From assembly GCF_006345805.1 (NCBI RefSeq), contig NC_043026.1, positions 8,680,001 to 8,744,000 of the forward strand: DNA of 64,000 nucleotides, written 5' to 3'. Shown piece after piece: positions 4,213 to 64,000 of the stretch; within the stretch, counting starts at the first letter, position 1, and each line of letters begins with the position of its first letter. The notes under the pieces are model-generated. The model made no database searches, had not been told where the DNA came from, and saw nothing but the letters and a program-made list of their open reading frames with translations. The translations under genes and the position numbers were made by a program. Origin of the DNA: Octopus sinensis. Lineage: Eukaryota.

Positions 4213-5500
4213 TGAGGGGCGTTCAATAAGTAATGCCCCTGACCCACTTCCCATAGCAGTAGAGCAACAAAACTTGGCACAGTTATTAGTCTTTTTCTAC
4301 ATAGGAACCACCCAGAGTTACGCATTTCTCCCATCGTTTGATGCGGCTCTGGAGACCGTTTTTGTAGAAGAACCCAGCTTGGTCCTCCAACCTCAACGTA
4401 ACTTCAGAAATCAAGGCTGCATCATCTGGGAAACGCTTTCCTTTCAAAAACAACTTCATGATTGGGAAGAGGTGAAAATCAGAGGGTGCAAGGTCAGGAA
4501 AGTAGGGGGGATGGGGAGGAGTTCATAGCCATACGCCTGTGCTTCTGATCTGGCGACAAGCAAGTTGTGGACCGGAGCGTTGTCCTGCAGGGGGAAGATG
4601 CCTTTGCTGATCTTGCCCCACCTCTTGATTTTGATAACTTCTCTTAATTTCCTCAAAAGTGAAGCATAATAGGCTCCTGCAATTGTGGTACCCTTTGCCA
4701 GGAAATCTGTCATCACTACTCCGTCCTGGTCCCAGAAGACTGTGAGCATGACCTTGCCAGCAGAGGGCTGCACCCTTGCCTTCTTTGGAGGTGAGTCACG
4801 GTGTGTCCACTGCATTGACTGGGCTTTGGTCTCTCGATCATCGTGATCGACCCAGGTTTCATCCTGTGTAATCAGTCTTTTGAAAAATTTTGACTCATCT
4901 TCTTGGCACATCTCCAAATTCACCCTAGAGCATTCAACGCGTTCTTGCTTCTGGAAAGGCGTGAACAACCTGGGAATCCATCTGGCAGACACCTTTTGCA
5001 TATGCAAATGGTCATGAATGATAGTTTCCACAGACCCGGTACTAATCTTGACCTCATGGGCTATTTGGCGAATAATTATGCGTCGATTTTCCAAAATGGC
5101 AGCCTCAACTTGACGGACAGATGCCTCATCAATGGCAGAAGGCAGCGACCAGATCTGGGAGCTGTTTCCACAGGGTTCCGACCATGTTTGAATTCACGAT
5201 GCCAGCGTTTTACAAGGTCATATGATGGGGCATCATCACCATAAGTTACTTTCATTTCATCAAAAGTCTCCCGTGGTGTGCGTCCTTTCAAATACAAAAA
5301 CCGGATCACTGCTCGACATTCAACAGGCTCCATTTCACACTTGACTCGGTTCAAACACCTGTAAATCAGAAACCGCAATTAATTCAGAGCTGTAATTTGC
5401 CACTTACTCTATAGAGATATAAATGATTGCACATGCAAAATTTCAGCTAGATCAAACAACTGCAAGTGGGTCAGAAGCATTACTTATTGAACGTCCCTCG
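4213..5500 (-). mobile_element. Full-length mariner element (1288 bp) with frameshifted DD(34)D-type transposase
   Basis: TIRs gaggggcgttcaataagtaatgc / gcattacttattgaacgtccctcg flanked by TA. Motifs WIPRLF, TQDETW, QDNAPVH and YFPDLAPSD are spread over three frames (5378 to ~4286). Confidence 0.92.
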
Positions 5501-14072: not shown

Positions 14073-15998
14073 TCAGTGGGATTGCTTCTTTTCTATATGA
14101 ACACGTTTGTGAGAAGTTAAGTTGCCATGTTGAGTGAATGACCTACCACAGATGTCACAGTGATATGGCTTCTCACCTGTATGAATACGTTTGTGCATAG
14201 TCAAGCAACTACTTCTGGAGAACAATTTACCACAGGTATCACAGCGATATGGCTTCTCACCTGTATGAAAACGTTTGTGAGAAGCTAAGTGGCCACTTTG
14301 AGAGAATGATTTACCACAGATATCACAGCGATAAGGCTTCTCTCCTGTATGAATACGTTTGTGGTTAGTCAAGTTATAATTCTGAGAGAATGATTTACCA
14401 CAAACGTCACAGGGAAATCGCTTTTCACCTGTATGAACAAGTATGTGAGAATTTAAAGCACTTTGTGAAGAAAATGATATACTACAGACATTACAGTGAT
14501 ACGGCTTTTCTCCGGTATGATGACGTTTGTGTGTAGTCAAGTAACTACTTGTGGAGAATAATTTACCACAGATATCACAGTGATATGGCTTCTCTCCTGT
14601 ATGGGAACGTTTATGAGTAGCTAAGCCACTACTTTGAGAGAATGATTTACCACAGATATCACAAGGATATGGTTTCTCTCCTGTGTGAATACGTTTGTGG
14701 TTAGTCAAGTTATAGTTTTGAGAGAATGATTTACCACAGATGTCACAGTGAAATCGTTTTTCCCCAGTATGAACAAGTACGTGAGAATTTAAAGCACTTT
14801 GGTAAGAGAATGATGTACCACAGACATTACAGTGATATGGTTTCTCTCCTGTATGAATACGTTTGTGTGTAGCCAAATTATTTTGTTGAAAGAAGGATTT
14901 ACCACAAATGTTACAGTGAAATGACTTCACTCCAGTATGAATATGTTTGTGCATATTCAAGCAACTACTTCGAGAGAAAGATTTATCACAGACGTCACAG
15001 TGATAGGGTTTCTCTCCTGTGTGGAAACGTTTGTGAGAAACTAAGTGGCCACTTTGAGAGAATGATTTACCACAGACATCACAATGATATGGCTTCTCTC
15101 CTGTATGAGTACGTTTGTGGTTAGTCAAGTTATAATTCTGAGAGAATGTTTTGCCACAAATGTCACAGTGAAATAGCTTCTCCCCTGTATGAACACCTAT
15201 GTGAGAATTTAAAGTACTTTGGCAAGAGAATGATGTACTACAGACATTACAGTGATAGGGCTTTTCTCCTGTATGAATACGGTTGTGTATAGTCAAGTTA
15301 TTTTTTTGAAAAAATGATTTACCACAGACATTACAGTGAAATGGCTTATCCCCTGTATGGAGACGCTTGTGTGTAGTCAAGTTATTTTGTTGAAAGAATG
15401 ATTTACCACAAATGTCACATTCATAAGGCTTCTCCCCTGTATGAACACGTTGGTGTGTAGTCAAGTGAATTTTTTGATAGAATGATTTACCACAGATGTC
15501 GCAATGATAAGGCTTCTCTCCTGTATGAATACGCTTGTGTGTAGCAAAGATACTTGCTGAAGAGAAAGATTTGCCACAGACACCACAATGATATGGCTTC
15601 TCTCTTGTGTGGATAAGTCTGTGAGCAATTAAGTTACTACTTACAGAAAATGATTTACTACAGATATCACAGTGATATGGCTTCTCCCCTGTATGGAAAC
15701 GTTTGTGAGAAGTTAAAGCACCATTCTGAGTGAATGATTTACTACAGATGTTACACTGATATGGCTTCTCTCCTGTATGAATACGTGTGTGAGATTTTAA
15801 ATCACTTCGGTTAGAGAATGATTTTCCGCAAATGACACAGTGAAATGGTTTCTCCCCTGTATGAATACGTTTGTGCATATTCAAACTGCTCTTATACGAG
15901 AATGACTTTTTACAGACATCACAGTCATGTGATAATCTTCTCCCTTTTTCTGCATCTTCAGGAAAAATCATCTCCTCTAGTTTTTCACTTTTTTCCAT
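14073..15998 (-). CDS. C2H2 zinc-finger protein, gene 2 (22 fingers, 641 aa from MEKSEK)
   Basis: Uninterrupted 28-aa finger repeats. Start assigned by leader homology. Confidence 0.92.
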
Positions 15999-16362
15999 TA
16001 TTTTTCTTTGAAAATCACAAAATATATATATATATGTTTTCTTCTTTGTACTGCTATAGTCTTTTGTTTGCAAGTATTTCGACTGCTGTATTTCTGTCCA
16101 GTGTTACCTTTGTCCCAAAACTCGTTAGTAAATTTATCCAAGTTTAATTTGCAAAGAGACACATCTTGTAGACACTCCAGCCAGTGATGTCCAGAAGGTT
16201 TGCTAATAACACATTTCAGAGTAAATATATCAGAGGAATTCCACCACAGATTTATAGAAACAATCTTATATATCTGTTGTGTACAATATTTCCAATTTGG
16301 TCTTTAAAAAGCTGATAAATAATGAGAATGTATCTTCAGTTATGCCAATGTCATCTGATATT

Positions 16363-17278
16363 CTGAAAGAATAAAGAAACAACAGTGTAAGATATAGAGG
16401 CTACTTAAAAAAATACAGATTCAACATTTCCATAAAGATAAACTGTAGAAATAAACATTTACCTGAACAACAGAACTTTCTAATTTACTAAAATTTACAT
16501 CAGAAAAATTTTGTGTGGTGCTAACATATTTGTAAACTCCAGCTCCACATTCACAATTATTTTTATAAACAAACTAAGGTTAGGGTTAAAAAGTCGTTGT
16601 AGGATCGACTACTTACGACTAGCTAGTGCGGATGCGCGCACCGGGACCACTGTTCGCTTGTAGTAACCCTACCTGACTGTGTTTCGAACTCACCCAACTT
16701 CAGCAACTATGCTGACCAATTCCTACTCCCGAACACAACAATACAAAATGATGGAGCAATACTCACAACGAAATCATTTCAAATAAACGGGGGAAAAATA
16801 AATAAAGAAATTACTCATTTTGCCCCGCTTACTGATTTCGTCCCTTTCCTTTTATCAAGAAATAAATATTTGGTGAATTATAATAAAGCATTGGATTCTT
16901 AACATTTCTGTGGTTGGAGTTTATTTGGGAATATTTCTCCATCTAAACACACAACAAACAAACGTGGAAACGATGGAAAGTGTGGGAAGAAATGAAGAAT
17001 TACTCATTTTGCCCCGCTTACTAATTTCTTCCCCTTCCCTATATCAAGTGATAAATTATAATAAAGCATTGGATTCTCAGCATTTCTGTGGTTGGAGTTT
17101 ATTTTAAGAACATTTCTCCACCTAAAACACACAACAAACAAACTTAAAGAAGAAACGATGGAGCGTGTAGGAGGTTGCCGCCATAGCTAGAAATAGCAGC
17201 CAAATGTGGAACAGATCAAAGGACATCTGAGACACCAAAGTATTAAAAGATTAAATGTTTTCGTTGTTTAATACTTAC
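16363..17278 (-). other. Inferred intron 1 of gene 2
   Basis: Donor GTAAGT at 17278-17273 and acceptor ctttattctttcAG at 16364-16363. Both sites are conserved among the paralogs that carry them. Confidence 0.6.
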
Positions 17279-17434
17279 GGAAATGTCTTTATAAAGGATG
17301 GTGTTGTTGTTGTTATGAGTGCATCAGGTGGGAGAGAAATGTATTATAAATGTGTTTGGGAGAAATTCTAGGCACCAGGGAGTCTTGTACTGCAGTGATG
17401 AATGGAGACGGAAGAACGTTTAGTGCGCATGCGT
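17279..17434 (-). promoter_or_regulatory. Promoter plus non-coding exon 1 of gene 2
   Basis: NRF1-like tgcgcatgcgt at 17424-17434; the exon ends at the conserved donor. Confidence 0.6.
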
Positions 17435-17512
17435 ATGAGATGTTGGCTTCAAATTTTTAGCACAAGGCCAGCAATATCGAGGGAGGGGGGTGCCTAAGTC
17501 GAATCCATGGAC

Positions 17513-17728
17513 CAGTGCTTTTCAAACTTTTTGCTGGAGCGGAACCCCAAGGAAACATTCCACTGGCTCGAGGAACCCCTGGGCAATAATTTAATAGTCT
17601 TATGCACACATATCTGCACAGGAGACTTAAAAATTACAGCCGATTTCAGCAGTTTTGTAACTTCTTGCGGAACCCCTGCACTGTACTGGCGGAACCCTAA
17701 GGTTCCACGGAACCCTGGTTGAAAACCA

Positions 17729-17759
<31 letters not shown>

Positions 17760-17801
17760 GACAAAAGAAGTCTCTACAGGATTCGATGAAGCCATATATT
17801 G

Positions 17802-17879
<78 letters not shown>

Positions 17880-18139
17880 ATGTGTATATTTAAAACACTA
17901 TACAATATATATATATATATATATCAGTGCTTTTCAAACTTTTTGCTGGAGCGGAACCCCAAGGAAACATTCCACTGGCTCGAGGAACCCCTGGGCAATA
18001 ATTTAATAGTCTTATGCACACATATCTGCACAGGAGACTTAAAAATTACAGCCGATTTCAGCAGTTTTGTAACTTCTTGCGGAACCCTGCACTGTACTGG
18101 CGGAACCCTAAGGTTCCACGGAACCCTGGTTGAAAACCA

Positions 18140-18174
<35 letters not shown>

Positions 18175-18214
18175 CAAAAGAAGTCTCTACAGGATTCGAT
18201 GAAGCCATATATTG

Positions 18215-18290
<76 letters not shown>

Positions 18291-18549
18291 ATGTGTATAT
18301 TTAAAACACTATACAATATATATATATATATATCAGTGCTTTTCAAACTTTTTGCTGGAGCGGAACCCCAAGGAAACATTCCACTGGCTCGAGGAACCCC
18401 TGGGCAATAATTTAATAGTCTTATGCACACATATCTGCACAGGAGACTTAAAAATTACAGCCGATTTCAGCAGTTTTGTAACTTCTTGCGGAACCCCTGC
18501 ACTGTACTGGCGGAACCCTAAGGTTCCACGGAACCCTGGTTGAAAACCA

Positions 18550-18584
<35 letters not shown>

Positions 18585-18624
18585 CAAAAGAAGTCTCTAC
18601 AGGATTCGATGAAGCCATATATTG

Positions 18625-18674
<50 letters not shown>

Positions 18675-19004
18675 ATGTGTATATTTAAAACACTATACAA
18701 TATATATATATATATATATCAGTGCTTTTCAAACTTTTTGCTGGAGCGGAACCCCAAGGAAACATTCCACTGGCTCGAGGAACCCCTGGGCAATAATTTA
18801 ATAGTCTTATGCACACATATCTGCACAGGAGGCTTAAAAATTACAGCCGATTTCAGCAGTTTTGTAACTTCTTGCGGAACCCCTGCACTGTACTGGCGGA
18901 ACCCTAAGGTTCCACGGAACCCTGGTTGAAAACCACTGATATATATATATATATATATATATGACAAAAGAAGTCTCTACAGGATTCGATGAAGCCATAT
19001 ATTG

Positions 19005-19056
<52 letters not shown>

Positions 19057-19317
19057 ATGTGTATATTTAAAACACTATACAATATATATATATATATATA
19101 TCAGTGCTTTTCAAACTTTTTGCTGGAGCGGAACCCCAAGGAAACATTCCACTGGCTCGAGGAACCCCTGGGCAATAATTTAATAGTCTTATGCACACAT
19201 ATCTGCACAGGAGGCTTAAAAATTACAGCCGATTTCAGCAGTTTTGTAACTTCTTGCGGAACCCCTGCACTGTACTGGCGGAACCCTAAGGTTCCACGGA
19301 ACCCTGGTTGAAAACCA

Positions 19318-19354
<37 letters not shown>

Positions 19355-19746
19355 CAAAAGAAGTCTCTACAGGATTCGATGAAGCCATATATTGCACATT
19401 TTATTTATATATATATATATATATATATAAATATGTGTATATTTAAAACACTATACAATATATATATATATATCAGTGCTTTTCAAACTTTTTGCTGGAG
19501 CGGAACCCCAAGGAAACATTCCACTGGCTCGAGGAACCCCTGTGCAATAATTTAATAGTCTTATGCACACATATCTGCACAGGAGACTTAAAAATTACAG
19601 CAGTTTTGTAACTTCTTGCGGAACCCCTGCACTGTACTGGCGGAACCCTAAGGTTCCACGGAACCCTGGTTGAAAACCACTGATATATATATATATATAC
19701 ATATGACAAGAGAAGTCTCTACAGGATTCGATGAAGCCATATATTG

Positions 19747-19824
<78 letters not shown>

Positions 19825-20070
19825 ATGTGTATATTTAAAACACTATACAATATATATATATATATATATCAGTGCTTTTCAAACTTTTTGCTGGAGCGGA
19901 ACCCCAAGGAAACATTCCACTGGCTCGAGGAACCCCTGGGCAATAATTTAATAGTCTTATGCACACATATCTGCACAGGAGACTTAAAAATTACAGCCGA
20001 TTTTAGCAGTTTTGTAACTTCTTGCGGAATCCCTGCACTGTACTGGCGGAACCCTGGTTGAAAACCACTG
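17513..20070. mobile_element. Composite array of seven ~219-bp hAT-type MITEs with six identical-type spacers, flanked by the 8-bp TSD CCATGGAC
   Basis: Units start at 17513, 17925, 18334, 18720, 19102, 19474 and 19870 with TIRs cagtgcttttcaa / ttgaaaaccactg. ccatggac occurs at 17505-17512 and 20071-20078. Confidence 0.9.
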
Positions 20071-20502
20071 CCATGGACCTCAGCTGTCGACTTCCAGAAA
20101 AAAGGATATTTTCTAATGAAGTTCTCGACAAATTTGCTCCAGATGCTGTAGATTACGACTGTTTTGAAATTTGTTGTGAAAAAATCGTTTTACCGAGGGT
20201 GGGAGGAAAGCTTCTAAAAATTTGCAAAAGTCAGCTTTCTTTTCTCATAATTTTAAAAAAAAATACTCGGGCGATGCTTCGGTATAGGTACACACGTGCC
20301 TTTGTTTACATTTCTGAAGATAACAGAAACCCTTTTCTTCACCCCCCTAACCCCCCACCCATATATATAAAAATCAAAACCCTTTCTTGAAATGTATCCA
20401 GTACTTTTGGTACTTACACCGGTACATCTACCGAAGTTACGCCAATACTAGGATTTTTTGCGTGGAATCAAGTACCCTGACCTTATATATGCTGCAAATT
20501 CC

Positions 20503-20905
20503 GGATCTTTTCGGTTTAAACGGCAGTTTTTTCTAGCGGCGTCATATGAAATTGTCACCCATAATTATGACACTAGTATCGATCTATTGCATTTCAATCT
20601 ATTTTAGGGTTAGCGTTAGGAGCGGGGTATCTTTTTTTCTTCACAAATGTAAATAAACCGAATCTGTTTCTTAAACGAGGGACATATTCATACGGCACAG
20701 AATGTTTTTCACCTCAATAGACGTCATTGATTGTTTGAAATTAAAGAAAAAACAACACCAAATATCTTACAAACTACAGAATTTTCTCAATAAAGCCAAG
20801 AGAAAAAGATGTTTTATAAACACATTCTACCAATATACGAAGTTTAAAAGTGTTTAGTTACGTGGAAATTATTTTAAAAAACTGCTGGTCAAACCGAAAA
20901 GATCC
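20503..20905. mobile_element. MITE with TIR ggatcttttcggttt
   Basis: ggatcttttcggttt...aaaccgaaaagatcc; same family as the element at 10919. Confidence 0.75.
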
Positions 20906-21433: not shown

Positions 21434-21543
21434 TCAATAAAATAAATACCAGCTGACTACTGAGGTCCATGGAATTGACTTACGCACCATCCCATGCCCC
21501 GAAGTTGCCGGCCTTGTGCCAAAATGTGAAATCAACATTTCAC

Positions 21544-21706
21544 ACGCATGCGCACTAAACGTTCTTCCGTCTCCATTCATTACATCTTAATAAATATCTC
21601 TGGTTCCATAATTTCTCTCAATTCACTCCCAAACACATTTATAATACATTTCTCTACCACCTGACGCACTTCTAACAACAACACCATCCTTTTTAAAACC
21701 ATTTCC
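21544..21706 (+). promoter_or_regulatory. Promoter plus non-coding exon 1 of gene 3 (divergent from gene 2)
   Basis: acgcatgcgca at 21544-21554, donor GTAAGT at 21707-21712, acceptor ttatttcAG at 23590-23591. Confidence 0.6.
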
Positions 21707-22361
21707 GTAAGTATTAAACTATTTAATTTTTAAATACTTCCTGTCTCAGATGTCCTTTGATTTGTTCCACATTTGGCTGCTATTTCTAGCTATGGCGGCA
21801 ACCTCCTACACGCTCCATCGTTTCTTCTTTAAGTTTGTTTGTTGTGTGTTTTAGGTGGAGAAATGTTCTTAAAATAAACTCCAACCACAGAAATGCTGAG
21901 AATCCAATGCTTTATTATAATTTATCGAACCCTTGTTTCTTAATATAAGGTAAGGGGACATAATTAGTAAGCGGGGCAAAATGAGTATTTTCCCATTTCT
22001 TCCTACACGCTCCATCATTTCCACGTTTGTTTGTTGTGTTTTAGTTGGAGAAATATTCCCAAATAAACTCCAACCACAGAAATGTTGAGAATCCAATGCT
22101 TTATCATAATTTATCGAATGCTTGTTTCTTACTATAAGGTGAGGGACAAACTTAGTAAGCGGGGCAAAATGAGTAATTTCTTATTTTTCCAATATGTTTG
22201 AAATGATTACATTGTGAGTATTGCTGCATTGTATTTAAGAGTGAAGGTTATTATGTATTATGTTTTTAATGCATTTAGGGAAGGCCATTTGCTTAGCTGA
22301 TAAACATTTTGTAAAATCTCGTTCCCCACCCCAACTACCATATCTATTTCCACTTTGTATA

Positions 22362-23950: not shown

Positions 23951-25773
<1,823 letters not shown>

Positions 25774-25776
25774 TAG

Positions 25777-25995
<219 letters not shown>

Positions 25996-27275: not shown

Positions 27276-27865
27276 AAGTTAATTTTTTGGCTCAAAAAGC
27301 AAAAAGCAAGGCCATGTAGGGGGACATGGAGTTATGTACAGGGAGGGTGTTCATGCAAAGAGTTCAGGCCATTTCTGGTCAAGAGAGACTTTGAACCGAG
27401 CGGTCGTTGGCATCTTCACTATCTCGTCCGGCAGCTTATTCCACGGATCTGCAACCCGGACGGAGAAAGCCCCTCTCCTTCGATTGAGATGAAATCGTCG
27501 CAGATAGAGCTTTTCGGAGTGACCCCACAGCCGACGCTCTATGTGTGTGTGTATATATAGTTAAGTTAATTTTTTGGCTCAAAAAGCAAGGCCATGTAGG
27601 GGGACATGGAGTTATGTACAGGGAGGGTGTTCATGCAAAGAGTTCAGACCATTTCTGGTCAAGAGAGACTTTGAACCGAGCGGTCATTGGCATCTTCACT
27701 ATCTCGTCCGGCAGCTTATTCCACGGATCCGCAACCCGGACGGAGAAAACCCCTCTCCTTCGATTGGGATGAAATCGTCGCAGATAGAGCTTTTCGGAGT
27801 GACCCCGCAGCCGACGCTCTAGAGCAGGAGTGAAGAACAGCTCTTTGTCAAGGGTTCACAAATTA
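27275..27865 (-). mobile_element. Two tandem L2/CR1-type LINE 3' ends
   Basis: The minus strand reads RGHSEKLYLRRFHLNRRRGAFSVRVADPWNKLP. A third copy lies at 33222-33416 (+). Confidence 0.7.
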
Positions 27866-28680: not shown

Positions 28681-29545
28681 AGAGATTCTGTCCATTTGTG
28701 TTTGTTCATTTGTTTGTCCTCCAAAATGAAAGTAAATGGTTCAAGGGAAACTGTTTTACTTTTTCTTCTTATGTTATCTATATATATATATAAAAGAAAT
28801 TCTGTCCGTTCGTGTTTGTCCTTCAAAATCAAAGTAAATGGTTCAAGGGGAACTATTATGCTTTTACTTCTAACCTAGGGAAACTATTATACTTTTCCTT
28901 CTTATCTTATTTATAGATATAAAAGAGAGATTCTGTCCATTTGTGTGTTTGTTTGTCCTCAGAAATGAAAGTAAATGGTTCAAGGGAAACTATTATGCTT
29001 TTTTTCTTATACAGGGAAACTACAATGCTTTTTCCTTTTATCTTTATCTATCTATATATATATATACAATTAAGGGCTCCTAAATTAGGATGCCGAGTGC
29101 TGGGAACACAAAAGGGAGATGAATTTATCGAGAGTGAAAATCAAAAACGTTTACCGATAACTTTACATCTCGGACTGATCAGTTTCTGCCTCTTTCTAGC
29201 AAAACACAGAATATGTTTGCTAAGGCATCCTAATTTAGGAGCCCTTAATTGTATTTCTACATGAATAATATTTTTCTATATGAATAATATTTTGTCTAAT
29301 GACTAATTTGTCTTTTGTGCTGGGCACCTGGTAGTAACCAATATTACTACCCTTCTTGTTTATATTCGCATATATATATATATATATATATGACAGAGAT
29401 TCTGTCCGTTTGTCCTCCAAAGCGAAAGTAAATGGTTCAAGGGAAACTATTGTTTTTTTTCTTCTTATTTATATATATAAAAGAGACTCTGTTGATTTGT
29501 GTTTGTTTGTCCTCCAAAATGAAAGTAAATGGATCAAAGGAAGCT
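28681..29545 (+). repeat. Degenerate tandem repeat of ~100-130-bp units resembling Helitron 5' ends
   Basis: About five units containing attctgtcc..tttgtcctccaaaatgaaagtaaatggttcaagggaaact, each preceded by tatatatataaa or a similar run. Confidence 0.65.
29067..29251. mobile_element. 185-bp TA-flanked MITE with perfect 28-bp TIRs
   Basis: caattaagggctcctaaattaggatgcc / ggcatcctaatttaggagcccttaattg. Confidence 0.85.
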
Positions 29546-33139: not shown

Positions 33140-33885
33140 ATAATTGTCACATATTACATTTACAGATAATTTCCTCTATTTACATAATATCGAGGTCTCT
33201 TTCTTTCTTTTATCTTACCATTTTTATCAACGTCCGGGTTGCGGATCCGTGGAATAAGCTGCCGGACGAGATAGTGAAGATGCCGAAGACCGCTCGGTTC
33301 AAAGTCTCTCTTGACCAGAAATGGCCTGAACTCTTTGCATGAACACCACCCTGTACATAACTCCATGTGCCCCTACATGGCCTAGCTTTTTGCTTTTTGA
33401 GCCAAATTAACTTAACTTGTATATATATGGAATGGAAATGGAAATTGCAGCTGTGATACCAGTGCCAGTGGTACGTAAGAGAACCATCTGAACGTGGCCA
33501 TTGCCAGCGCTGCCCCGACTGGCCTCTGTGCCGGTGGTATGTAAAAAGCACCATCCGATCGGGGCTGTTGCCAGCCTCACCTGGCCTCCATGCCAGTGGT
33601 ACATAAAAAGTACCATCTGATCGTGGCCGTTTGCCTGCCTCGTCTGGCATGTAAAAAGCACCCACTACACTCATGGAGTGGTTGGTGTTAGGAAGGGCAT
33701 CCAGCCGTAGAAACATTGCCAGATCAGACTGGGCCTGCTAGCATGAAAAGCGGACGCTAAACGATGATGATGATGATAAAGTTATCAAGAAACTATATAT
33801 AAGGAAAATACTGACATAATTATCAAAGGGCAGTACCTATTCTATTGGAGTAAACTCAAGTAAAAGTAGACAATTATTGTAGGGC

Positions 33886-34083
33886 AGTGGTTCCCAAACT
33901 ATGAGTCGTGACCCCCAGATGGGTCACGAATGGAATCTTAGTGGGTCTTAAAAAGTTATAAAATTACGCATTAGCTTTGATTAACTGCTGTCTATCGAGA
34001 TAGTTCAAGACTTCAAGTGGGTCGTCATAAACTGGTGTGATAAATAGTGGGTCGTGACTCTAAAAAGTTAAGGAACAACTGCT
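33886..34083. mobile_element. hAT-type MITE
   Basis: cagtggttcccaaact...aaggaacaactg with imperfect 8-bp flanks ttgtaggg / ctgtaggg. 3' fragments at ~35120-35187 and ~35480-35548. Confidence 0.65.
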
Positions 34084-34269: not shown

Positions 34270-35042
<773 letters not shown>

Positions 35043-35755
35043 GACTGAAGACGTAATCTGAAATAAATTTCTTAATTTCATTAATGTTTTTACTCAGTAG
35101 AGGGATGTGCTCTGCAGGATTATGGGTCGTCATAAACTGGTATGATAAATAGAGGGTCGCAACTCTAAAAAGTTTGGGAACCACTGAACTAGACTAAAGG
35201 ATTTTTTTGACTTCATGATGCTTCCGCTCTTTTGCTACCCTCTTAAAAAAGCACAGGCTGCATTTCATTGTGGCCCCATCATCAGTAAGGTTCCTTATAC
35301 ACCCAGTAAGTTTATAAATTATTTAAAAAGTATAGGAGTGATCACCAGGACGCATTGAACCTGATGTTAATTCTATTATTGAGCGTAGCAAGAGACAGGA
35401 TCATCCTTCTCACAGGCCTCACTGAAGACGTAATCTGAAATAAATTTCTTAATTTCATTAATGTTTTTACTCAGTAGAGTTAAGTGGGTCGTCATAAACT
35501 GGTGTGATAAATAGTGGGTCGCGACTCTAAAAAGTTTGGGAACCACTGTTCTAGTGTTAACCGTTTAGCATGTAAACCAGCCACAACTGGACCAAATATG
35601 CTACCTCTTTTATTTTCAAACTAACCAGAGTTGGCCTCTTACACCTACCCTACAATGTTATTCTAAAAATACTCAATCACATCGTCATCACTTGAAAGCT
35701 GTGAGTTAATGCAGGACAAATTGAAAATAACGTGAATAAACATCACATTGGACAG

Positions 35756-40012: not shown

Positions 40013-40184
40013 ACTTACGGAATGTCTTTATAAAGGATGGTGTTGTTGTTGTTTATGAGTGCATCAGGTGGGAGAGAAATGTATTATAAATGTGTTTGGG
40101 AGTGAATTGAGAGAAATTCTGGCGCCAAACAAAGCTTGTCAGATGTAATGAATAGAAGCGGAAATAGGTTTAGTGCGCATGCGT
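40013..40184 (-). promoter_or_regulatory. Promoter plus exon 1 module, unit A
   Basis: tgcgcatgcgt at 40174-40184, donor at 40013-40018, acceptor at 38904-38905. Confidence 0.6.
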
Positions 40185-40597
40185 ATGTAATAGTTGTGCG
40201 TGATATTCACATTTTGGCACAAGGCCAGCAATTTCAGGGGAGGGGAGGTGCGTAAGTCGATTACCGCGGACCGCAGTTGTTAACTGGTATTTATTTTATT
40301 GAATCCCAGCAAAAGGTGAAAGGCAAACTTTATTTGGATCTTTTCGCTTTGACCGACAGATTTTTAAAATAATTTCTTTTTAACTAAAAAATTTAAACTT
40401 CGTATACTGGTAGAATGTGTTACATAAAACATCTTTTTCTCTTGGCTTCTTGAGAAAATTCTGTATTCTGTTTAGTTTGTAAGGTATTTGTTTCTTTAAT
40501 TTCTTGCATTTCGGCAATTTCAACAACCAATCAATACTCTATTGAGGTGAATACAATCTGGTCCGGATCTTGTCAACAACAATTTTTTTTGCGCTGT

Positions 40598-44441: not shown

Positions 44442-45926
44442 TATTTTTCTTCAAAAATCACAGTATATAATCTTTTTTCACCTTTTCGCTTCCATAGTGT
44501 TTTGTTTACAAATATTTCAGCTGCTGTATTTCTGTCCATTGTTAATTTTGTCCCAAAACATTTTACTAAAATAATCCAAGTTTAATTCTTACACAGATTC
44601 ATCTTGTGGACACTCCAGCCAGTGATATCCAGAAGGTTTGCTAATAACACATTTCAGAGTAAATATATCAGAGGAATTCCACCACAGATTTGTAGAAACA
44701 ATCTTATATATCTGTTCTGTACAATATTTCCATTTTGGTCTTTAAAAGATGATAAATAATGAGAACGTATCTTCAGATATGCCAATGTCATCTGATATTC
44801 TGAAATAATAAAGAAACAACAGTGTAAGATATAGAGGCTATTTTAAAAAATACAGATTCAACATTTCCATAGAGATAAACTCTAGAAATAAACATTTAAC
44901 TGAACAACAGAACTTTTTAATTTATTAATATTTACATCACAAAATCTTGTGTGAAGCTAACATATTTGTAAACTCCAGCTACACATTCACACACACACAC
45001 GTTTATATATATATATACTCTTCCTTGTGTTAGTTGTTTTGACTGTGTCTATACTGGAGCATCATCTTAGAGGGTATTAGTTGATCAAATCAACCCTAGG
45101 ACTTCATTTTTGAGCCTAGTACTTATATTGGCCTCTTTTGTGAAACCACTAAATTATGGCGACATAAACACACCAACACTGGTTATCAAACAGTCACAAA
45201 GACACACAGATATATATATATGTATATACACATAAATACTCATTAATATATATAGGGCTTCTTTCAGTTTCCATTCCAGAAAGCACGCAATCCCCAAAGT
45301 AAAAAAACCCAGGATTTTATAACATTCAGAGTTCGGAAATGTCCTTTGAAATAATTCTGTCTAAAACCTACAATAATTTCAGTTGAAATATTCCTAAGCA
45401 ACGTCAATAGTGAGAAAATAAGGCGAAATTACTCATTTTGCCCCGCTTACTAATTTCTTCCCGATCCCGATACCAAGAAACAAACATTCGATGACTCATA
45501 ATAAAGTATTCTTTATAACATCCCACGGAAGTTTCCAGCAGAGTTCTGGAATGTCGTTTAGAATAACTCTGGCTAAAACCTACAATAAATTCAGTTGAAA
45601 TCTTTCTAACCAATGTCATAATGGTGAGAGAATAAGGAGAAATTACTCATTTTGCCCCACCTAACTATTTTGTCCCCTTCCCTGTATCAAGTGACAAACA
45701 TTCGATAGATTATAATAAAGCATTGGATTCTCAGCATTTCTGTGGTTGGAATGTATTTTAAGAACATTTCTCCACCTAAAACACACAACAAACAAACTTA
45801 AAGAAGAAACGATGGAGCGTGTAGGAGGTTGCCGCCATAGCTAGAAATAGCAGCCAAATGTGGAACAGATCAAAGGACATCTGAGACACCAAAGTATTAA
45901 AAGATTAAATGTTTTCGTTGTTTAAT

Positions 45927-46096
45927 ACTTACGGAAATGTCTTTATAAAGGATGGTGTTGTTGTTATGAGTGCATCAGGTGGGAGAGAAATGTATTATAA
46001 ATGTGTTTCGGAGTTAATTGAGAGAAATTCTGGCGCCAAACAAAGCTTGTCAAGATGTAATGAATGGAAGCGGAAATAGGTTTAGTGCGCATGCGT
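45927..46096 (-). promoter_or_regulatory. Promoter plus exon 1 module, unit B
   Basis: tgcgcatgcgt at 46086-46096, donor at 45927-45932. Confidence 0.6.
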
Positions 46097-46774
46097 ATGT
46101 AATAGTTGCGCGTGATATTCACATTTTGGCACAAGTCCAGCAATTTCAGGGGAGGGGAGGGTGCGTAAGTCGATTACCGCGGACCTCAGTTGTTAACTGG
46201 TATTTATTTTATTGAACCCCAGCAAAAAGGTGAAAGGCAAACTTTATTTGGATCTTTTAGCTTTGACCGACAGATTTTTAAAATAATTTCTTTTTAACTA
46301 AAAAAATTTAAACTTCGTATACTGTAGAATGTGATACATAAAACATCTTTTTCTCTTGGCTTTCTTGAGAAAATTCTGTAGTTTGTAAGCTATTTGTTCT
46401 TTAATTTCGGCAATTTCAACCAATCAATGACGTCTATTGAGGTGAATACAATTTCTGCCGTAGTTTCTCAACAACTTCCTGCACAGATACACACATTACA
46501 TATGATATATTCGTTTAAGAATCAGATTGGGGATCTTTTCGGTTTGAACGGCAGTTTTTTTAAATAATTTCCACGTAACTAAACACTTTTAAACTTCGTA
46601 TTCTGGTAGAATGTGTTTATAAAACATCTTTTTCTCGTGGCTTTCTTGAGAAAATTCTGTAGTTTGTAAGGTATTTGTTCTTTAATTTCTTGCATTTCGG
46701 CAATTTCAACCAATCAATGACGTCTATTGAGGTGAATACAATCTGTCCGGATCTTTGTCAACAACAATTTTTTG

Positions 46775-47520
46775 CGCTGTCAGCAATTAGAGCAAAGTCA
46801 TCAGCATAGGGAAGCTCCCAGGGTCATACTGTCTTGAATTCCTCCGTTATTACCTGGAGGACTATGATAAATAGGAGGGGGCTGAGGACTGAACCTTGGT
46901 GGACCCCTACATCTACCCTGAATTCTTCAGCGTACTCGTTGCCAACCCTAACCTTAAGTGCAGCATCCCGTACATGGCTTGCACGGCTCTCACTGACCAT
47001 TCATCTATCCCTAGATTCCTCATTGACCACCAGATAAGTGATCGGGGGACCCTGTCAAAAGCTTTCTCCATGTCAACGAAAGCGAGGTACAGGGGCTTAT
47101 CTTTGGCTAGGTATTTCTCCTGCAGCTGTCTTACCAGAAATATAGCATCAGTGGTGCTTTTCCCTGGCACGAAACCAAACTGCATTTCATCCAAACTGAC
47201 TCTCTCCCTAATTAGTTGGGCTATGACCCTCTCCGTGACCATCATTATCTGATCCAACAACTTTATACCTCTGTAATTATTTGTATCTAAACCATCACCT
47301 TTACCTTTGTAGCAGTTGACTATGGTGCTGCTACACCAGTCGTTGGGTATGACTCCTTCATGTATCACCTGGTTAACTGTACGGGTGACTAGGCTATAGC
47401 CGACACTGCCAGATATTTTGAGCATCACTGCAGTAATTCCTGATGGGCCGGGGACTTTCTCTCTCTTCATACTTGTAATTGCCTTATCTATCGAGGTACT
47501 GTCAACTCAGATAGCTGGTC
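46775..47520 (-). mobile_element. RTE-clade reverse transcriptase fragment through the YADD motif (unit B)
   Basis: ORF 46913-47470 plus PWELPYADDFALIADS at ~46830-46780. Confidence 0.9.
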
Positions 47521-53154: not shown

Positions 53155-53324
53155 ACTTACGGAAATGTCTTTATAAAGGATGGTGTTGTTGTTATGAGTG
53201 CATCAGGTGGGAGAGAAATGTATTACAAATGTGTTTGGGAGTGAATTGAGAGAAATTCTGGCGCCAAACAAAGCTTGTCAAGATGTAATGAATGGAAGCG
53301 GAAATAGGTTTAGTGCGCATGCGT
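53155..53324 (-). promoter_or_regulatory. Promoter plus exon 1 module, unit C
   Basis: tgcgcatgcgt at 53314-53324, donor at 53155-53160. Confidence 0.6.
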
Positions 53325-53719
53325 ATGTAATAGTTGCGCGTGATATTCACATTTTGGCACAAGGCCAGCAATTTCAGGGGAGGGGAGGGTGCGTAAGTCG
53401 ATTACCGCGGACCTCAGTTGTTAACTGGTATTTATTTTATTGAACCCCAGCAAAGAGGTGAAAGGCAAACTTTATTTGGATCTTTTCGCTTTGACCGACA
53501 GATTTTTAAATAATTTCCACGTAACTAAACACTTTTAAACTTCGTATACTGGTAGAATGTGTTACATAAAACATCTTTTTCTCTTGGCTTTATTGAGAAA
53601 ATTATGTAGTTTGTAAGCTATTTGTTCTTTAATTTCTTGCATTTCGGCAATTTCAACCAATCAATGACGTCTATTGAGGTGAATACAATCTGTCCGGATC
53701 TTTGTCAACAACAATTTTT

Positions 53720-63193: not shown

Positions 63194-63366
63194 ACTTACG
63201 GAAATGTCTTTATAAAGGATGGTGTTGTTGTTGTTATGAGTGCATCAGGTGGGAGAGAAATGTATTATAAATGTGTTTGGGAGTGAATTGAGAGAAATTC
63301 TGGCGCCAAACAAAGCTTGTCAAGATGTAATGAATGGAAGCGGAAATAGGTTTAGTGCGCATGCGT
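63194..63366 (-). promoter_or_regulatory. Promoter plus exon 1 module, unit D
   Basis: tgcgcatgcgt at 63356-63366, donor at 63194-63199, acceptor at 60283-60284. Confidence 0.6.
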
Positions 63367-63499
63367 ATGTAATAGTTGTGCGTGATATTCACATTTTGGC
63401 ACAAGGCCAGCAATTTCAGGGGAGGGGAGGGTGCGTAAGTCGATTACCGCGGACCGCAGTTGTTAACTGGTATTTATTTTATTGAACCCCAGCAAAAAG

Positions 63500-64000
63500 G
63501 TGAAAGGCAAACTTTATTTGGATCTTTTCGCTTTGACCGACAGATTTTTAATATAATTTCCACGTAACTAAACACTTTTAAACTTCGTATACTGGTAGAA
63601 TGTGTTTATAAAACATCTTTTCCTCTTGGCTTTCTTGAGAAAATTCTGTAGTTTGTAAGCTATTTGTTCTTTAATTTCGGCAATTTCAACCAATCAATGA
63701 CGTCTATTCAGGTGAATACAATTTCTGCCGTAGTTTGTCAAAAACTTCCTGCACAGATACACACATTACATATTATCTATTCGTTTAAAAATCAGAATGG
63801 GGATCTTTTCGGTTTGAACGGCCGTTTTTTTAAATAATTTCCACGTAACTAAACACTTTTAAACTTCGTATACTGGTAGAATGTGTTACATAAAATATCT
63901 CTTTCTCGTGGCTTTCTTGAGAAAATACTGTAATTTGTAAGCTATTTGTTCTTTAATTTCTTGCATTTCAGCAATTTCAACCAATCAATGACGTCTATTG
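63500..64000. mobile_element. Tandem partial copies of the gatcttttcggttt MITE family
   Basis: Same arrangement as 46250-46745 upstream of promoter B. Confidence 0.65.

What the first reader, a model, noticed from the sequence alone, without database searches (positions are those of the whole stretch)
17505..20078. Seven-unit MITE-plus-spacer array bounded by a single 8-bp TSD: a composite hAT transposon in a ZNF promoter
Seven ~219-bp MITEs alternate with six spacers made of (TA)n, a 50-bp unique piece, (TA)n, a 29-bp piece and (TA)n. Internal MITE ends are flanked by atatatat, but the two outermost ends are flanked by CCATGGAC. An 8-bp TSD is the hAT hallmark (established). The paralogous empty site is visible in the gene 3 promoter (gtccatgg, 21465-21472), so the duplication is real. 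The spacer is foreign to this locus, so at least two MITE copies plus donor DNA moved as one unit, with tandem amplification before or after the jump. Units carry private variants (copies 4 and 5 share G; copies 6 and 7 have 9- and 18-bp deletions), which argues against a pure assembly artefact. The insertion is ~70 bp upstream of the NRF1-like site, between the divergent genes 2 and 3.
Basis: partly seen in the sequence, partly recalled or inferred. Interest (0 to 1): 0.85.

Follow-up and report, generated by a model that had tools for sequence, protein, structure and literature searches.

The report
MITE-plus-spacer array inserted as one block
Seven near-identical copies of a small hAT-type mobile element, separated by six copies of a foreign TA-rich spacer, sit as one 2.56-kb block between a single 8-bp target duplication in front of a zinc-finger gene; it most likely jumped in as a composite unit, a process known from maize and flies, so it is a neat natural example and not a new principle.

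Summary
Seven MITEs (219, 218, 219, 219, 219, 209 and 201 bp) alternate with six spacers of 153-193 bp. Each spacer is (AT)n, a 49-bp piece, (TA)n, a 29-bp piece, (TA)n. Only the two outermost MITE ends abut CCATGGAC; all internal ends abut ATATATAT.

CCATGGAC occurs three times in the 64 kb: the two array flanks and the paralogous gene 3 promoter, where it is single. The joined flanks align across the insertion point to five paralogous promoter blocks, so the 8-bp duplication is real. Neither the MITE nor the spacer has another copy in the window.

The ends are hAT-like: they start CAGTG, the terminal inverted repeat matches at 13 of 15 positions, and there are five subterminal GGAACCC motifs. 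Related elements in metagenome contigs share the last ~43 bp and have 8-bp duplications.

Best explanation (0.6): a macrotransposon-like composite insertion using the outermost ends, plus unequal exchange between units. The donor locus, the transposase, the organism and allelic or read support were all out of reach.

Maize Ac macrotransposons, a fly hobo array and coral MITE arrays are precedents. I rate it a new variant of a known kind, of moderate interest.

The parts
17505..17512 (+). Left copy of the 8-bp target-site duplication, CCATGGAC
   Evidence: Directly abuts the 5' end of MITE 1. Homologous to the single copy in the paralogs.
17513..17731 (+). MITE copy 1 (219 bp). 5' end CAGTGCTTTTCAAAC, 3' end GGTTGAAAACCACTG.
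   Evidence: Identical to copy 3.
17732..17924 (+). Spacer 1 (193 bp): (AT)n 28 bp, 49-bp piece, (TA)n 68 bp, 29-bp piece, (TA)n 19 bp
17925..18142 (+). MITE copy 2 (218 bp; 1-bp deletion in a run of C)
18143..18333 (+). Spacer 2 (191 bp)
18334..18552 (+). MITE copy 3 (219 bp; identical to copy 1)
18553..18719 (+). Spacer 3 (167 bp; short middle (TA)n)
18720..18938 (+). MITE copy 4 (219 bp; A>G shared with copy 5)
18939..19101 (+). Spacer 4 (163 bp). Spacer 3 + MITE 4 and spacer 4 + MITE 5 look like the most recent duplicate pair (period ~382 bp).
19102..19320 (+). MITE copy 5 (219 bp; A>G shared with copy 4)
19321..19473 (+). Spacer 5 (153 bp; C>T in the 29-bp piece, and a TT interruption of (TA)n)
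19474..19682 (+). MITE copy 6 (209 bp; G>T and a 10-bp deletion between CAGC direct repeats)
19683..19869 (+). Spacer 6 (187 bp; A>G in the 49-bp piece, and an AC interruption of (AT)n)
19870..20070 (+). MITE copy 7 (201 bp; two C>T changes and an 18-bp deletion between CGGAACCCT direct repeats; terminal 24 bp intact)
20071..20078 (+). Right copy of the 8-bp target-site duplication, CCATGGAC
20079..20092 (+). Right flank still homologous to the paralogous promoters (11 of 14 matches to the gene 3 copy)
16751..17512 (-). Context: promoter-proximal block of the minus-strand ZNF gene (ZNF exon 14073-16073). It is paralogous to five other blocks and contains the conserved GCGCATGCG motif at 17425-17433, which ends 79 bp from the insertion point.
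21465..21472 (-). Paralogous unoccupied target: a single CCATGGAC (GTCCATGG on the plus strand) in the promoter block of the divergent plus-strand ZNF gene

Best explanation
The block 17513-20070 is a composite, macrotransposon-like insertion built from a non-autonomous hAT-type MITE. The proposed history has four steps.

1. At a donor locus elsewhere, a 219-bp MITE sat in a TA-rich region. It had inserted into an (AT)n tract, which explains the ATATATAT on both sides of every internal copy.
2. At least two direct copies separated by the ~150-190-bp TA-rich spacer arose there.
3. A hAT transposase supplied in trans paired the 5' end of the first MITE with the 3' end of a later one. It cut out MITE-(spacer-MITE)n as one piece and integrated it at CCATGGAC, at the distal edge of a ZNF gene's promoter block. 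This made one 8-bp duplication around the whole block.
4. Unequal exchange or replication slippage between the 380-410-bp units, before and/or after the jump, set the copy number at seven and keeps the units 98.6-100% alike.

**Shown:** the array, the single TSD, the unoccupied paralogous sites, the foreignness of the spacer within the window, the hAT-like ends, and the youth of the units relative to the flanks.

**Inferred:** movement as a unit, the donor structure, the transposase, and the timing of amplification.

**Likely local effect (inferred only):** 2.56 kb of repeats and long (TA)n tracts now separate the conserved promoter block from everything upstream of it.
For: **Single TSD.** CCATGGAC lies only at the outermost ends. 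Internal junctions are ATATATAT and never CCATGGAC. The chance of an 8/8 match is 2.5e-5, and the 8-mer occurs only three times in 64 kb.

**Empty sites.** Five paralogous promoter blocks have one copy of the 8-mer, as CCATGGAC or CCGCGGAC. They align to the joined flanks on both sides of the insertion point.

**Foreign spacer.** The 49-bp piece, the 29-bp piece and the MITE have no other copy in the window.

**hAT features.**
- The ends begin CAGTG, the TIR matches at 13 of 15 positions, and there are five GGAACCC subterminal motifs.
- Thirteen metagenome contigs hold elements that share the last ~43 bp. Their TSDs are 8 bp: CTCTACAG exact, and GCCTAGAC/GCCTAGAA.
- A second hAT-like MITE family in the window also has an 8-bp TSD.

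**Youth.** MITE copies differ by 0-3 substitutions, while the flanking promoter block is 84.6% identical to its closest paralog.

**Amplification by unit.** Spacer 3 + MITE 4 and spacer 4 + MITE 5 share the A>G change and the short spacer form. The TRF period is 382 bp.

**Precedent.**
- Ac macrotransposons and composite insertions excise and insert with one 8-bp TSD (PMC9910405; PMC4270019).
- A hobo dimer expanded to about 16 copies by unequal exchange (PMC5932611).
Against: - No donor locus and no second array were found. The spacer is absent from the metagenome, prokaryotic-genome and viral contig collections, none of which is expected to hold this genome.
- No hAT transposase lies in the window.
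- The organism was not identified.
- The empty site is paralogous, not allelic or orthologous.
- A single assembly gives no read-level support for the copy number.
- CCATGGAC matches the hAT target consensus nTnnnnAn only at the A. That consensus is recalled from established knowledge and was not tested here.
- Copy 7, which supplies the outer 3' end, lacks 18 bp of the subterminal region that is conserved in the related elements. If that deletion predates the jump, the end used was sub-optimal.
Confidence: 0.6

Rival explanations
1. Solo insertion followed by recombinational copying. A single MITE inserted at CCATGGAC in the ordinary way. Later a break inside it was repaired by synthesis-dependent strand annealing, using a MITE-spacer-MITE array at another locus as template. 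That copied spacer-MITE units in without disturbing the TSD.
For: This gives the same end product: TSD, then MITE-(spacer-MITE)n, then TSD. The units are very young relative to the flanks. The 219 bp of homology on each side could support ectopic repair; this last point is inference from established knowledge of gap repair.
Against: It needs two rare events where the composite model needs one, and it still needs the same donor array elsewhere. No solo-MITE allele is visible. Ectopic conversion that carries in more than 2 kb through 219-bp homology is uncommon.
Confidence: 0.15
2. One-step multi-copy composite insertion. Alternative transposition paired the facing ends of two neighbouring MITEs, or of sister-chromatid copies, during S phase. 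This set up re-replication or a rolling circle of MITE plus flanking DNA. The array of whole units was therefore created during the insertion event itself and not by later unequal exchange.
For: In maize, reversed-ends transposition produces composite insertions with hAT termini, donor flanking DNA and an 8-bp TSD, via a rolling-circle replicon (PMC4270019). The spacer's structure, two unique pieces each bounded by (TA)n, would fit a junction between left-flank and right-flank donor DNA formed within a microsatellite.
Against: The maize products described hold a few large segments and not seven short units. The graded private variants (copies 4 and 5 share one change; copies 6 and 7 are the most divergent) fit stepwise exchange better. 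Nothing in the window distinguishes the two routes.
Confidence: 0.1
3. Assembly artefact. The real locus holds one MITE or a dimer, and the copy number or the join was inflated by mis-assembly across (TA)n tracts.
For: (TA)n tracts and near-identical 400-bp units are hard to assemble. Copies 1 and 3 are identical. The 1-bp deletion in copy 2 lies in a homopolymer.
Against: Units carry distinct substitutions, two different microhomology-flanked deletions and six different spacer lengths. A simple collapse or expansion artefact would not create these. Both outer junctions read cleanly into paralogous flank.
Confidence: 0.08
4. Double insertion at the same target, followed by unequal exchange, as for the Drosophila hobo array.
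For: hAT elements do form tandem dimers this way, and one such dimer expanded to about 16 copies (PMC5932611).
Against: That model puts the target's own 8-bp TSD between the tandem copies. Here every internal junction is a 153-193-bp foreign spacer and CCATGGAC is absent.
Confidence: 0.02

Closest known systems
Maize Ac/Ds macrotransposons and composite insertions (Huang & Dooner 2008, as cited in PMC9910405; Zhang et al. 2014, PMC4270019; Sharma & Peterson 2022, PMC9910405)
   Same: The termini of separate hAT elements act together. Host DNA lying between or beside them is carried along. The whole structure is bounded by one 8-bp TSD and can hold several copies of the carried segment.
   Different: In maize the ends belong to Ac or fractured Ac, the structures are 10-28 kb, and they were recovered in genetic screens with the donor known. 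Here the ends belong to 219-bp MITEs, there are seven complete elements and six short spacers, the genome is an unidentified animal-like one, and the donor and transposase are unknown.
Drosophila melanogaster hobo tandem array from a double insertion (McGurk & Barbash 2018, PMC5932611)
   Same: A hAT-superfamily element stands in a head-to-tail euchromatic array of about ten or more copies. The array is young and is explained by unequal exchange after a dimer formed.
   Different: hobo copies are separated by the 8-nt TSD of the array's own target (GTGGGGAC). Here the copies are separated by a foreign 153-193-bp spacer, and the target's TSD is found only at the two outer ends.
[quoted passage not shown] 2010, PMC2872659)
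   Same: Arrays of complete MITEs, some with gaps between the elements. [quoted passage not shown]
   Different: CMITEs are piggyBac-type with a TTAA TSD. Their arrays were attributed to replication slippage in place. A single TSD around a whole array was not reported in the passages I read.
Tandem-repeat-containing MITEs and MITE-derived satellites (DTC84 in Donax, PMC3879986; Xstir and miDNA4 in Xenopus, as reviewed in PMC12628747)
   Same: A mobile element bounded by inverted ends carries a variable number of internal tandem repeats. This links transposons to satellite-like arrays.
   Different: In those families the repeated unit is an internal segment without element termini. Here every unit contains a complete MITE with both TIRs, plus non-element DNA.
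Bacterial composite transposons (two IS copies bracketing passenger DNA)
   Same: The logic is the same: the outermost ends of two copies are used, so the passenger DNA moves and one TSD flanks the whole.
   Different: Different transposase families and a different domain of life. They do not form tandem arrays of element plus passenger. This comparison rests on established knowledge and was not tested here.

Membership tests
hAT superfamily, non-autonomous element (MITE) | 8-bp target-site duplication | tested here: met
   CCATGGAC lies on both outer sides and is single in the paralogs. Related elements with the same termini have CTCTACAG (8/8) and GCCTAGAC/GCCTAGAA (7/8).
hAT superfamily, non-autonomous element (MITE) | Short terminal inverted repeats beginning (C/T)A(G/A)NG | tested here: met
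   5' CAGTGCTTTTCAAAC against the reverse complement of the 3' end, CAGTGGTTTTCAACC: 13 of 15 match, and both start CAGTG. The consensus itself is recalled from established knowledge.
hAT superfamily, non-autonomous element (MITE) | Target preference nTnnnnAn | tested here: inconclusive
   CCATGGAC has the A at position 7 but C at position 2. ATATATAT (the internal flanks) and CTCTACAG (L005) fit fully. Three sites are too few to judge.
hAT superfamily, non-autonomous element (MITE) | An autonomous partner with matching ends that encodes a hAT transposase (BED finger, DDE, hAT dimerisation domain) | not tested
   No hAT domain lies in the window's long ORFs. The related contigs have no ORF longer than 141 aa. 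The source genome is not available.
hAT superfamily, non-autonomous element (MITE) | Small size, no coding capacity, multiple dispersed copies | tested here: inconclusive
   Each copy is 219 bp with only fortuitous ORFs. No dispersed copy of this exact MITE was found in the window or in any collection. Only relatives that share the termini were found.
Macrotransposon / composite insertion | Two or more element copies in direct orientation, with intact outermost 5' and 3' ends | tested here: met
   Seven direct copies. The outer 5' end of copy 1 and the outer 3' end of copy 7 are identical to the internal ends.
Macrotransposon / composite insertion | One TSD around the whole structure, and none of the target's TSD at internal junctions | tested here: met
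Macrotransposon / composite insertion | The intervening DNA is foreign to the target site | tested here: met
   The spacer pieces are absent from the rest of the window and from five paralogous sites.
Macrotransposon / composite insertion | A donor locus, or other insertions of the same composite with different TSDs | not testable with these tools
   The spacer was not found in the metagenome, prokaryotic-genome or viral contigs. The source genome is not in reach.
Macrotransposon / composite insertion | An allelic or orthologous empty site | not testable with these tools
   Only paralogous empty sites are available.
TE tandem array from a double insertion (hobo type) | The target's TSD lies between adjacent copies | tested here: not met
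   The internal junctions are 153-193-bp spacers flanked by ATATATAT.
Tandem-repeat-containing MITE (DTC84 / pearl / Xstir type) | The repeat units are internal segments that lack element termini, between one pair of arms | tested here: not met
   Every unit holds a complete MITE with both TIRs.
Satellite DNA | Long homogeneous arrays at many loci or in heterochromatin | tested here: inconclusive
   There are seven units at one euchromatic locus. Genome-wide abundance is unknown.

The most novel reading that the evidence does not exclude
The MITE-plus-spacer unit may be a transposable proto-satellite. On this reading, blocks of several units are repeatedly cut out at any pair of outer MITE ends and pasted elsewhere by a hAT transposase. 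Short arrays of the same ~400-bp repeat would then be seeded across euchromatin, including gene promoters, each bounded by its own 8-bp duplication. That would be a direct cut-and-paste route for dispersing satellite-like arrays, distinct from double insertion, from internal-repeat MITEs and from Helitron carriage.
Probability: 0.2. Interest if true: 0.7.

Novelty: new variant of a known kind. Interest (0 to 1): 0.42.

Why it matters
It is a clean natural example, outside maize genetics, of several small non-autonomous hAT elements acting as one large transposon that carries foreign DNA.

It also shows an array whose unit is "whole element plus passenger". If other such arrays exist in the same genome, that would be a concrete mechanism for how satellite-like repeats become scattered through gene-rich DNA.

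Locally, 2.56 kb of repeats with long (TA)n tracts sit at the distal edge of a promoter block conserved among six paralogous zinc-finger genes. The paralogs therefore offer a natural comparison for any effect on expression.

Tried and rejected
**Searches that found nothing useful**
1. The spacer as an exact 27-mer: nothing in the metagenome, prokaryotic-genome or viral contigs.
2. The MITE's 5' end (22-mer) and its 3' end (24-mer) in the viral contigs, and the 3' 24-mer in the prokaryotic genomes: nothing.
3. Fortuitous ORFs used as handles to other genomic copies. The spacer+MITE ORF search was swamped by YIYIYI words. The MITE-only ORF shared no words with any protein. Three exact-ORF look-ups found nothing.
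4. Identifying the organism through the neighbouring ZNF protein: only generic animal ZNFs at 57% identity or less. Rfam and tRNA scans of the window were empty.
5. The TIR strings as literature search terms: no paper.
6. A hAT transposase in the window or in the related contigs: none among the ORFs.

**Explanations considered and rejected**
7. Double insertion at this site: rejected, because the internal junctions lack the target's TSD.
8. A local origin for the spacer: rejected for the 64-kb window.
9. A weak TIR-like match near the paralogous sites (about 46219-46239 and 63489-63509; E = 1.3): judged to be chance.
10. The 410-bp unique block 14 bp to the right of the array as part of the element: no TIR or TSD signature, and the TSD closes the element at 20070.
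Full report

Yes. Reading 17300-20300 and locating the element ends by exact match gives seven head-to-tail copies of one element. They lie at 17513-17731, 17925-18142, 18334-18552, 18720-18938, 19102-19320, 19474-19682 and 19870-20070, with lengths 219, 218, 219, 219, 219, 209 and 201 bp.

Six spacers of 193, 191, 167, 163, 153 and 187 bp separate them. Each parses as (AT)n of 22-32 bp, a 49-bp unique piece, (TA)n of 28-68 bp, a 29-bp piece, and (TA)n of 15-19 bp. Tandem Repeats Finder sees the array with a period of 382 bp and a score of 2973.

All twelve internal element ends abut ATATATAT. Only the outer 5' end (17505-17512) and the outer 3' end (20071-20078) abut CCATGGAC.

- Copies 4 and 5 share an A>G change.
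- Copy 6 has a G>T change and a deletion between CAGC direct repeats. The deletion is 10 bp, not 9.
- Copy 7 has two C>T changes and an 18-bp deletion between CGGAACCCT direct repeats.
- Copy 2 lacks one C in a run of C.
- Spacers 5 and 6 each carry one substitution in a unique piece.

**2. Is the 8-bp duplication real?**

The chance of an 8/8 match at this base composition is 2.5e-5. CCATGGAC or its complement occurs only three times in the 64 kb: the two array flanks and 21465.

The 200 bp to the left of the array has paralogs at 21670..21465 (minus strand, 79.5%) and at 40053-40260, 45964-46173, 53192-53401 and 63234-63443. With a longer query, 16751-17512 matches 22229..21465 at 84.6%.

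I joined the left flank, with one copy of the 8-mer, to the sequence after the second copy, and aligned that to the five paralogs. Homology runs straight across the join. The gene 3 paralog reads CCATGGAC once, followed by CTCAGTAGTCAGCT, against CTCAGCTGTCGACT here (11 of 14). The other four paralogs read CCGCGGAC once. These are paralogous rather than allelic empty sites, but they show that the ancestral state was one copy of the 8-mer with nothing inserted.

**3. What is the element?**

- The 219-bp unit has a 15-bp terminal inverted repeat matching at 13 positions: CAGTGCTTTTCAAAC against CAGTGGTTTTCAACC.
- It has five direct GGAACCC motifs in its subterminal parts, at positions 29, 60, 157, 179 and 197.
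- It has only fortuitous ORFs.
- It matches no Rfam family.

The 24-mer at its 3' end occurs in 13 JGI metagenome contigs. These share only the last ~43 bp with it and nothing else with the window. They therefore hold a related family in another, unidentified host.

Where both ends could be paired, those elements are 119-701 bp long. They have a 5' end CAGTGTTTTT(C/A)AAC and subterminal GGAACCC. Their 8-bp duplications are CTCTACAG (exact, the same locus seen in four contigs) and GCCTAGAC/GCCTAGAA.

A second MITE family in the window, with CAGTGGTTCCCAAAC ends at 33885-34081, also has an 8-bp duplication, TTGTAGGG/CTGTAGGG.

CAGTG-type ends plus an 8-bp duplication are the hAT signature. That consensus is established knowledge and was not tested here. 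No hAT transposase was found in the window or in the related contigs, so the autonomous partner remains unknown.

**4. Is the spacer foreign?**

Within the window, yes. The 49-bp piece, the 29-bp piece (beyond low-complexity TA matches) and the MITE occur only inside the array. None of the five paralogous sites has them.

Outside the window I could not find the spacer. Those collections are not expected to contain this genome, so that is weak evidence.

Attempts to reach the source genome through fortuitous ORFs or the neighbouring gene all failed. The organism is unidentified.

**5. Context**

The window is a cluster of C2H2 zinc-finger genes. The array lies between a minus-strand gene (ZNF exon 14073-16073) and a plus-strand gene (ZNF exon 23951-25967), whose upstream regions are inverted paralogs.

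The insertion point is the distal edge of the conserved block of the minus-strand gene. It is 79 bp beyond a GCGCATGCG motif that recurs at nine places in the window, including once in each of the aligned promoter blocks. "In a ZNF promoter" is thus reasonable, but no transcription start was mapped.

**6. How it most likely arose**

The junction pattern constrains the history.

- If seven elements had inserted independently, or twice at the same site as in the Drosophila hobo array (PMC5932611), the target's own 8-mer would lie between the copies. It does not.
- If the array had grown in place from a solo insertion, the spacer would have to be local sequence. It is not.

That leaves an origin elsewhere. 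The ATATATAT on both sides of each internal copy fits an original hAT insertion into an (AT)n tract. The unit of MITE plus TA-rich flank then became at least a dimer.

The simplest way to bring MITE-(spacer-MITE)n here with one 8-bp duplication is for a transposase to use the 5' end of the first copy and the 3' end of the last. This is exactly what Ac macrotransposons and composite insertions do in maize (PMC9910405; PMC4270019).

Unequal exchange between the 380-410-bp units then explains the copy number and the pattern of shared variants:
- Spacer 3 + MITE 4 and spacer 4 + MITE 5 are near-duplicates.
- Copies 1 and 3 are identical.
- The 3'-most units carry most of the private changes.

The units differ by at most 3 substitutions in 219 bp, while the flanking block is about 15% diverged from its closest paralog. 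The array, or at least its last homogenisation, is therefore much younger than the gene duplication. Whether amplification came before or after the jump cannot be decided from this window.

**7. Rivals**

- **Solo insertion later converted by ectopic repair.** A solo MITE here was converted using a donor array elsewhere. The product would be the same, but it needs an extra rare event. I give it 0.15.
- **One-step rolling-circle or re-replication origin during alternative transposition.** This is known in maize. I give it 0.10.
- **Mis-assembly across (TA)n.** This is made unlikely by distinct substitutions, two different microhomology deletions and six different spacer lengths, but it cannot be excluded without reads. 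I give it 0.08.
- **Double insertion at this site.** Refuted by the internal junctions. I give it 0.02.

**8. Comparison with what is known**

The structure works like a maize Ac macrotransposon or composite insertion followed by hobo-like array expansion. It meets the structural criteria I could test:
- direct copies with intact outer ends;
- one duplication around the whole block;
- none of the target's duplication inside;
- a foreign passenger.

It is not a double-insertion array, because the junction test is not met. It is not a tandem-repeat-containing MITE of the DTC84, Xstir or miDNA4 kind (PMC3879986; PMC12628747), because each unit is a complete element.

Tandem arrays of whole MITEs, some with gaps, were described for piggyBac-type CMITEs in corals and attributed to slippage (PMC2872659). 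In the passages I read, a single duplication bounding such an array was not reported.

**9. Verdict**

The components are known processes, however, and the decisive evidence could not be reached here. That evidence is a donor locus, other arrays, an allelic empty site, read support and the transposase.

I rate it a new variant of a known kind, with an interest of about 0.4. If whole-genome searches show many such arrays with different duplications, it would become a good model for the cut-and-paste dispersal of satellite-like repeats.

Noticed in passing
window 33885-34081, 35044-35186, 35421-35548: A second hAT-like MITE family with CAGTGGTTCCCAAAC ends. One complete 197-bp copy has an 8-bp TSD, TTGTAGGG/CTGTAGGG. 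Two further 3'-end copies, 87% alike and in the same orientation, lie downstream, with a ZNF-exon fragment (34278-35048) between the complete copy and them. This may be another multi-end structure.
   Followed up: partly
window 20093-20502: About 410 bp of sequence unique in the window starts only 14 bp to the right of the array, where the paralogs have about 62 bp. Plus-orientation paralogy resumes only as a 30-bp island at 20503-20532. No TIR or TSD was found at its edges, and its origin is unexplained.
   Followed up: partly
window 2073, 17425, 21545, 40175, 42175, 46087, 49052, 53315, 63357: The NRF1-like palindromic motif GCGCATGCG recurs at nine places. It is invariant in every aligned ZNF promoter block, which suggests a shared promoter element for the whole cluster.
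   Followed up: partly
window 16797-16963 and 16987-17143: An internal direct duplication (83% identity) inside the conserved promoter block of the array-bearing gene. It is also seen in the gene 3 copy at 21804-22003 and 22001-22190.
   Followed up: no
window 4456-5094 (-) and 46913-47470 (-): A mariner-type transposase fragment (PF01359, E = 1.5e-22) and a reverse-transcriptase fragment (PF00078, E = 1.4e-11). These are other decayed mobile elements within the ZNF cluster.
   Followed up: no
L008, positions 1118-1743 in locus coordinates (minus strand): A related 399-bp MITE, with TSD GCCTAGAC/GCCTAGAA, is nested inside another copy of its own family, at a site that the family itself carries internally.
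   Followed up: no
L001, L005, L009, L012: Four contigs from different JGI metagenome samples carry the same 3' junction and right flank (CTCTACAGCTATGG). In L005, L009 and L012 the complete 701-bp related element is visible; in L001 only its 3' end fits on the contig. The contigs come from a host genome present in several samples. That host was not identified.
   Followed up: no
window 27300-27821; 28744-29060; 45327-45724: Other short tandem duplications in the intergenic DNA: 280 bp x 1.9 copies at 97%, 137 bp x 2.4 copies, and 214 bp x 1.9 copies.
   Followed up: no
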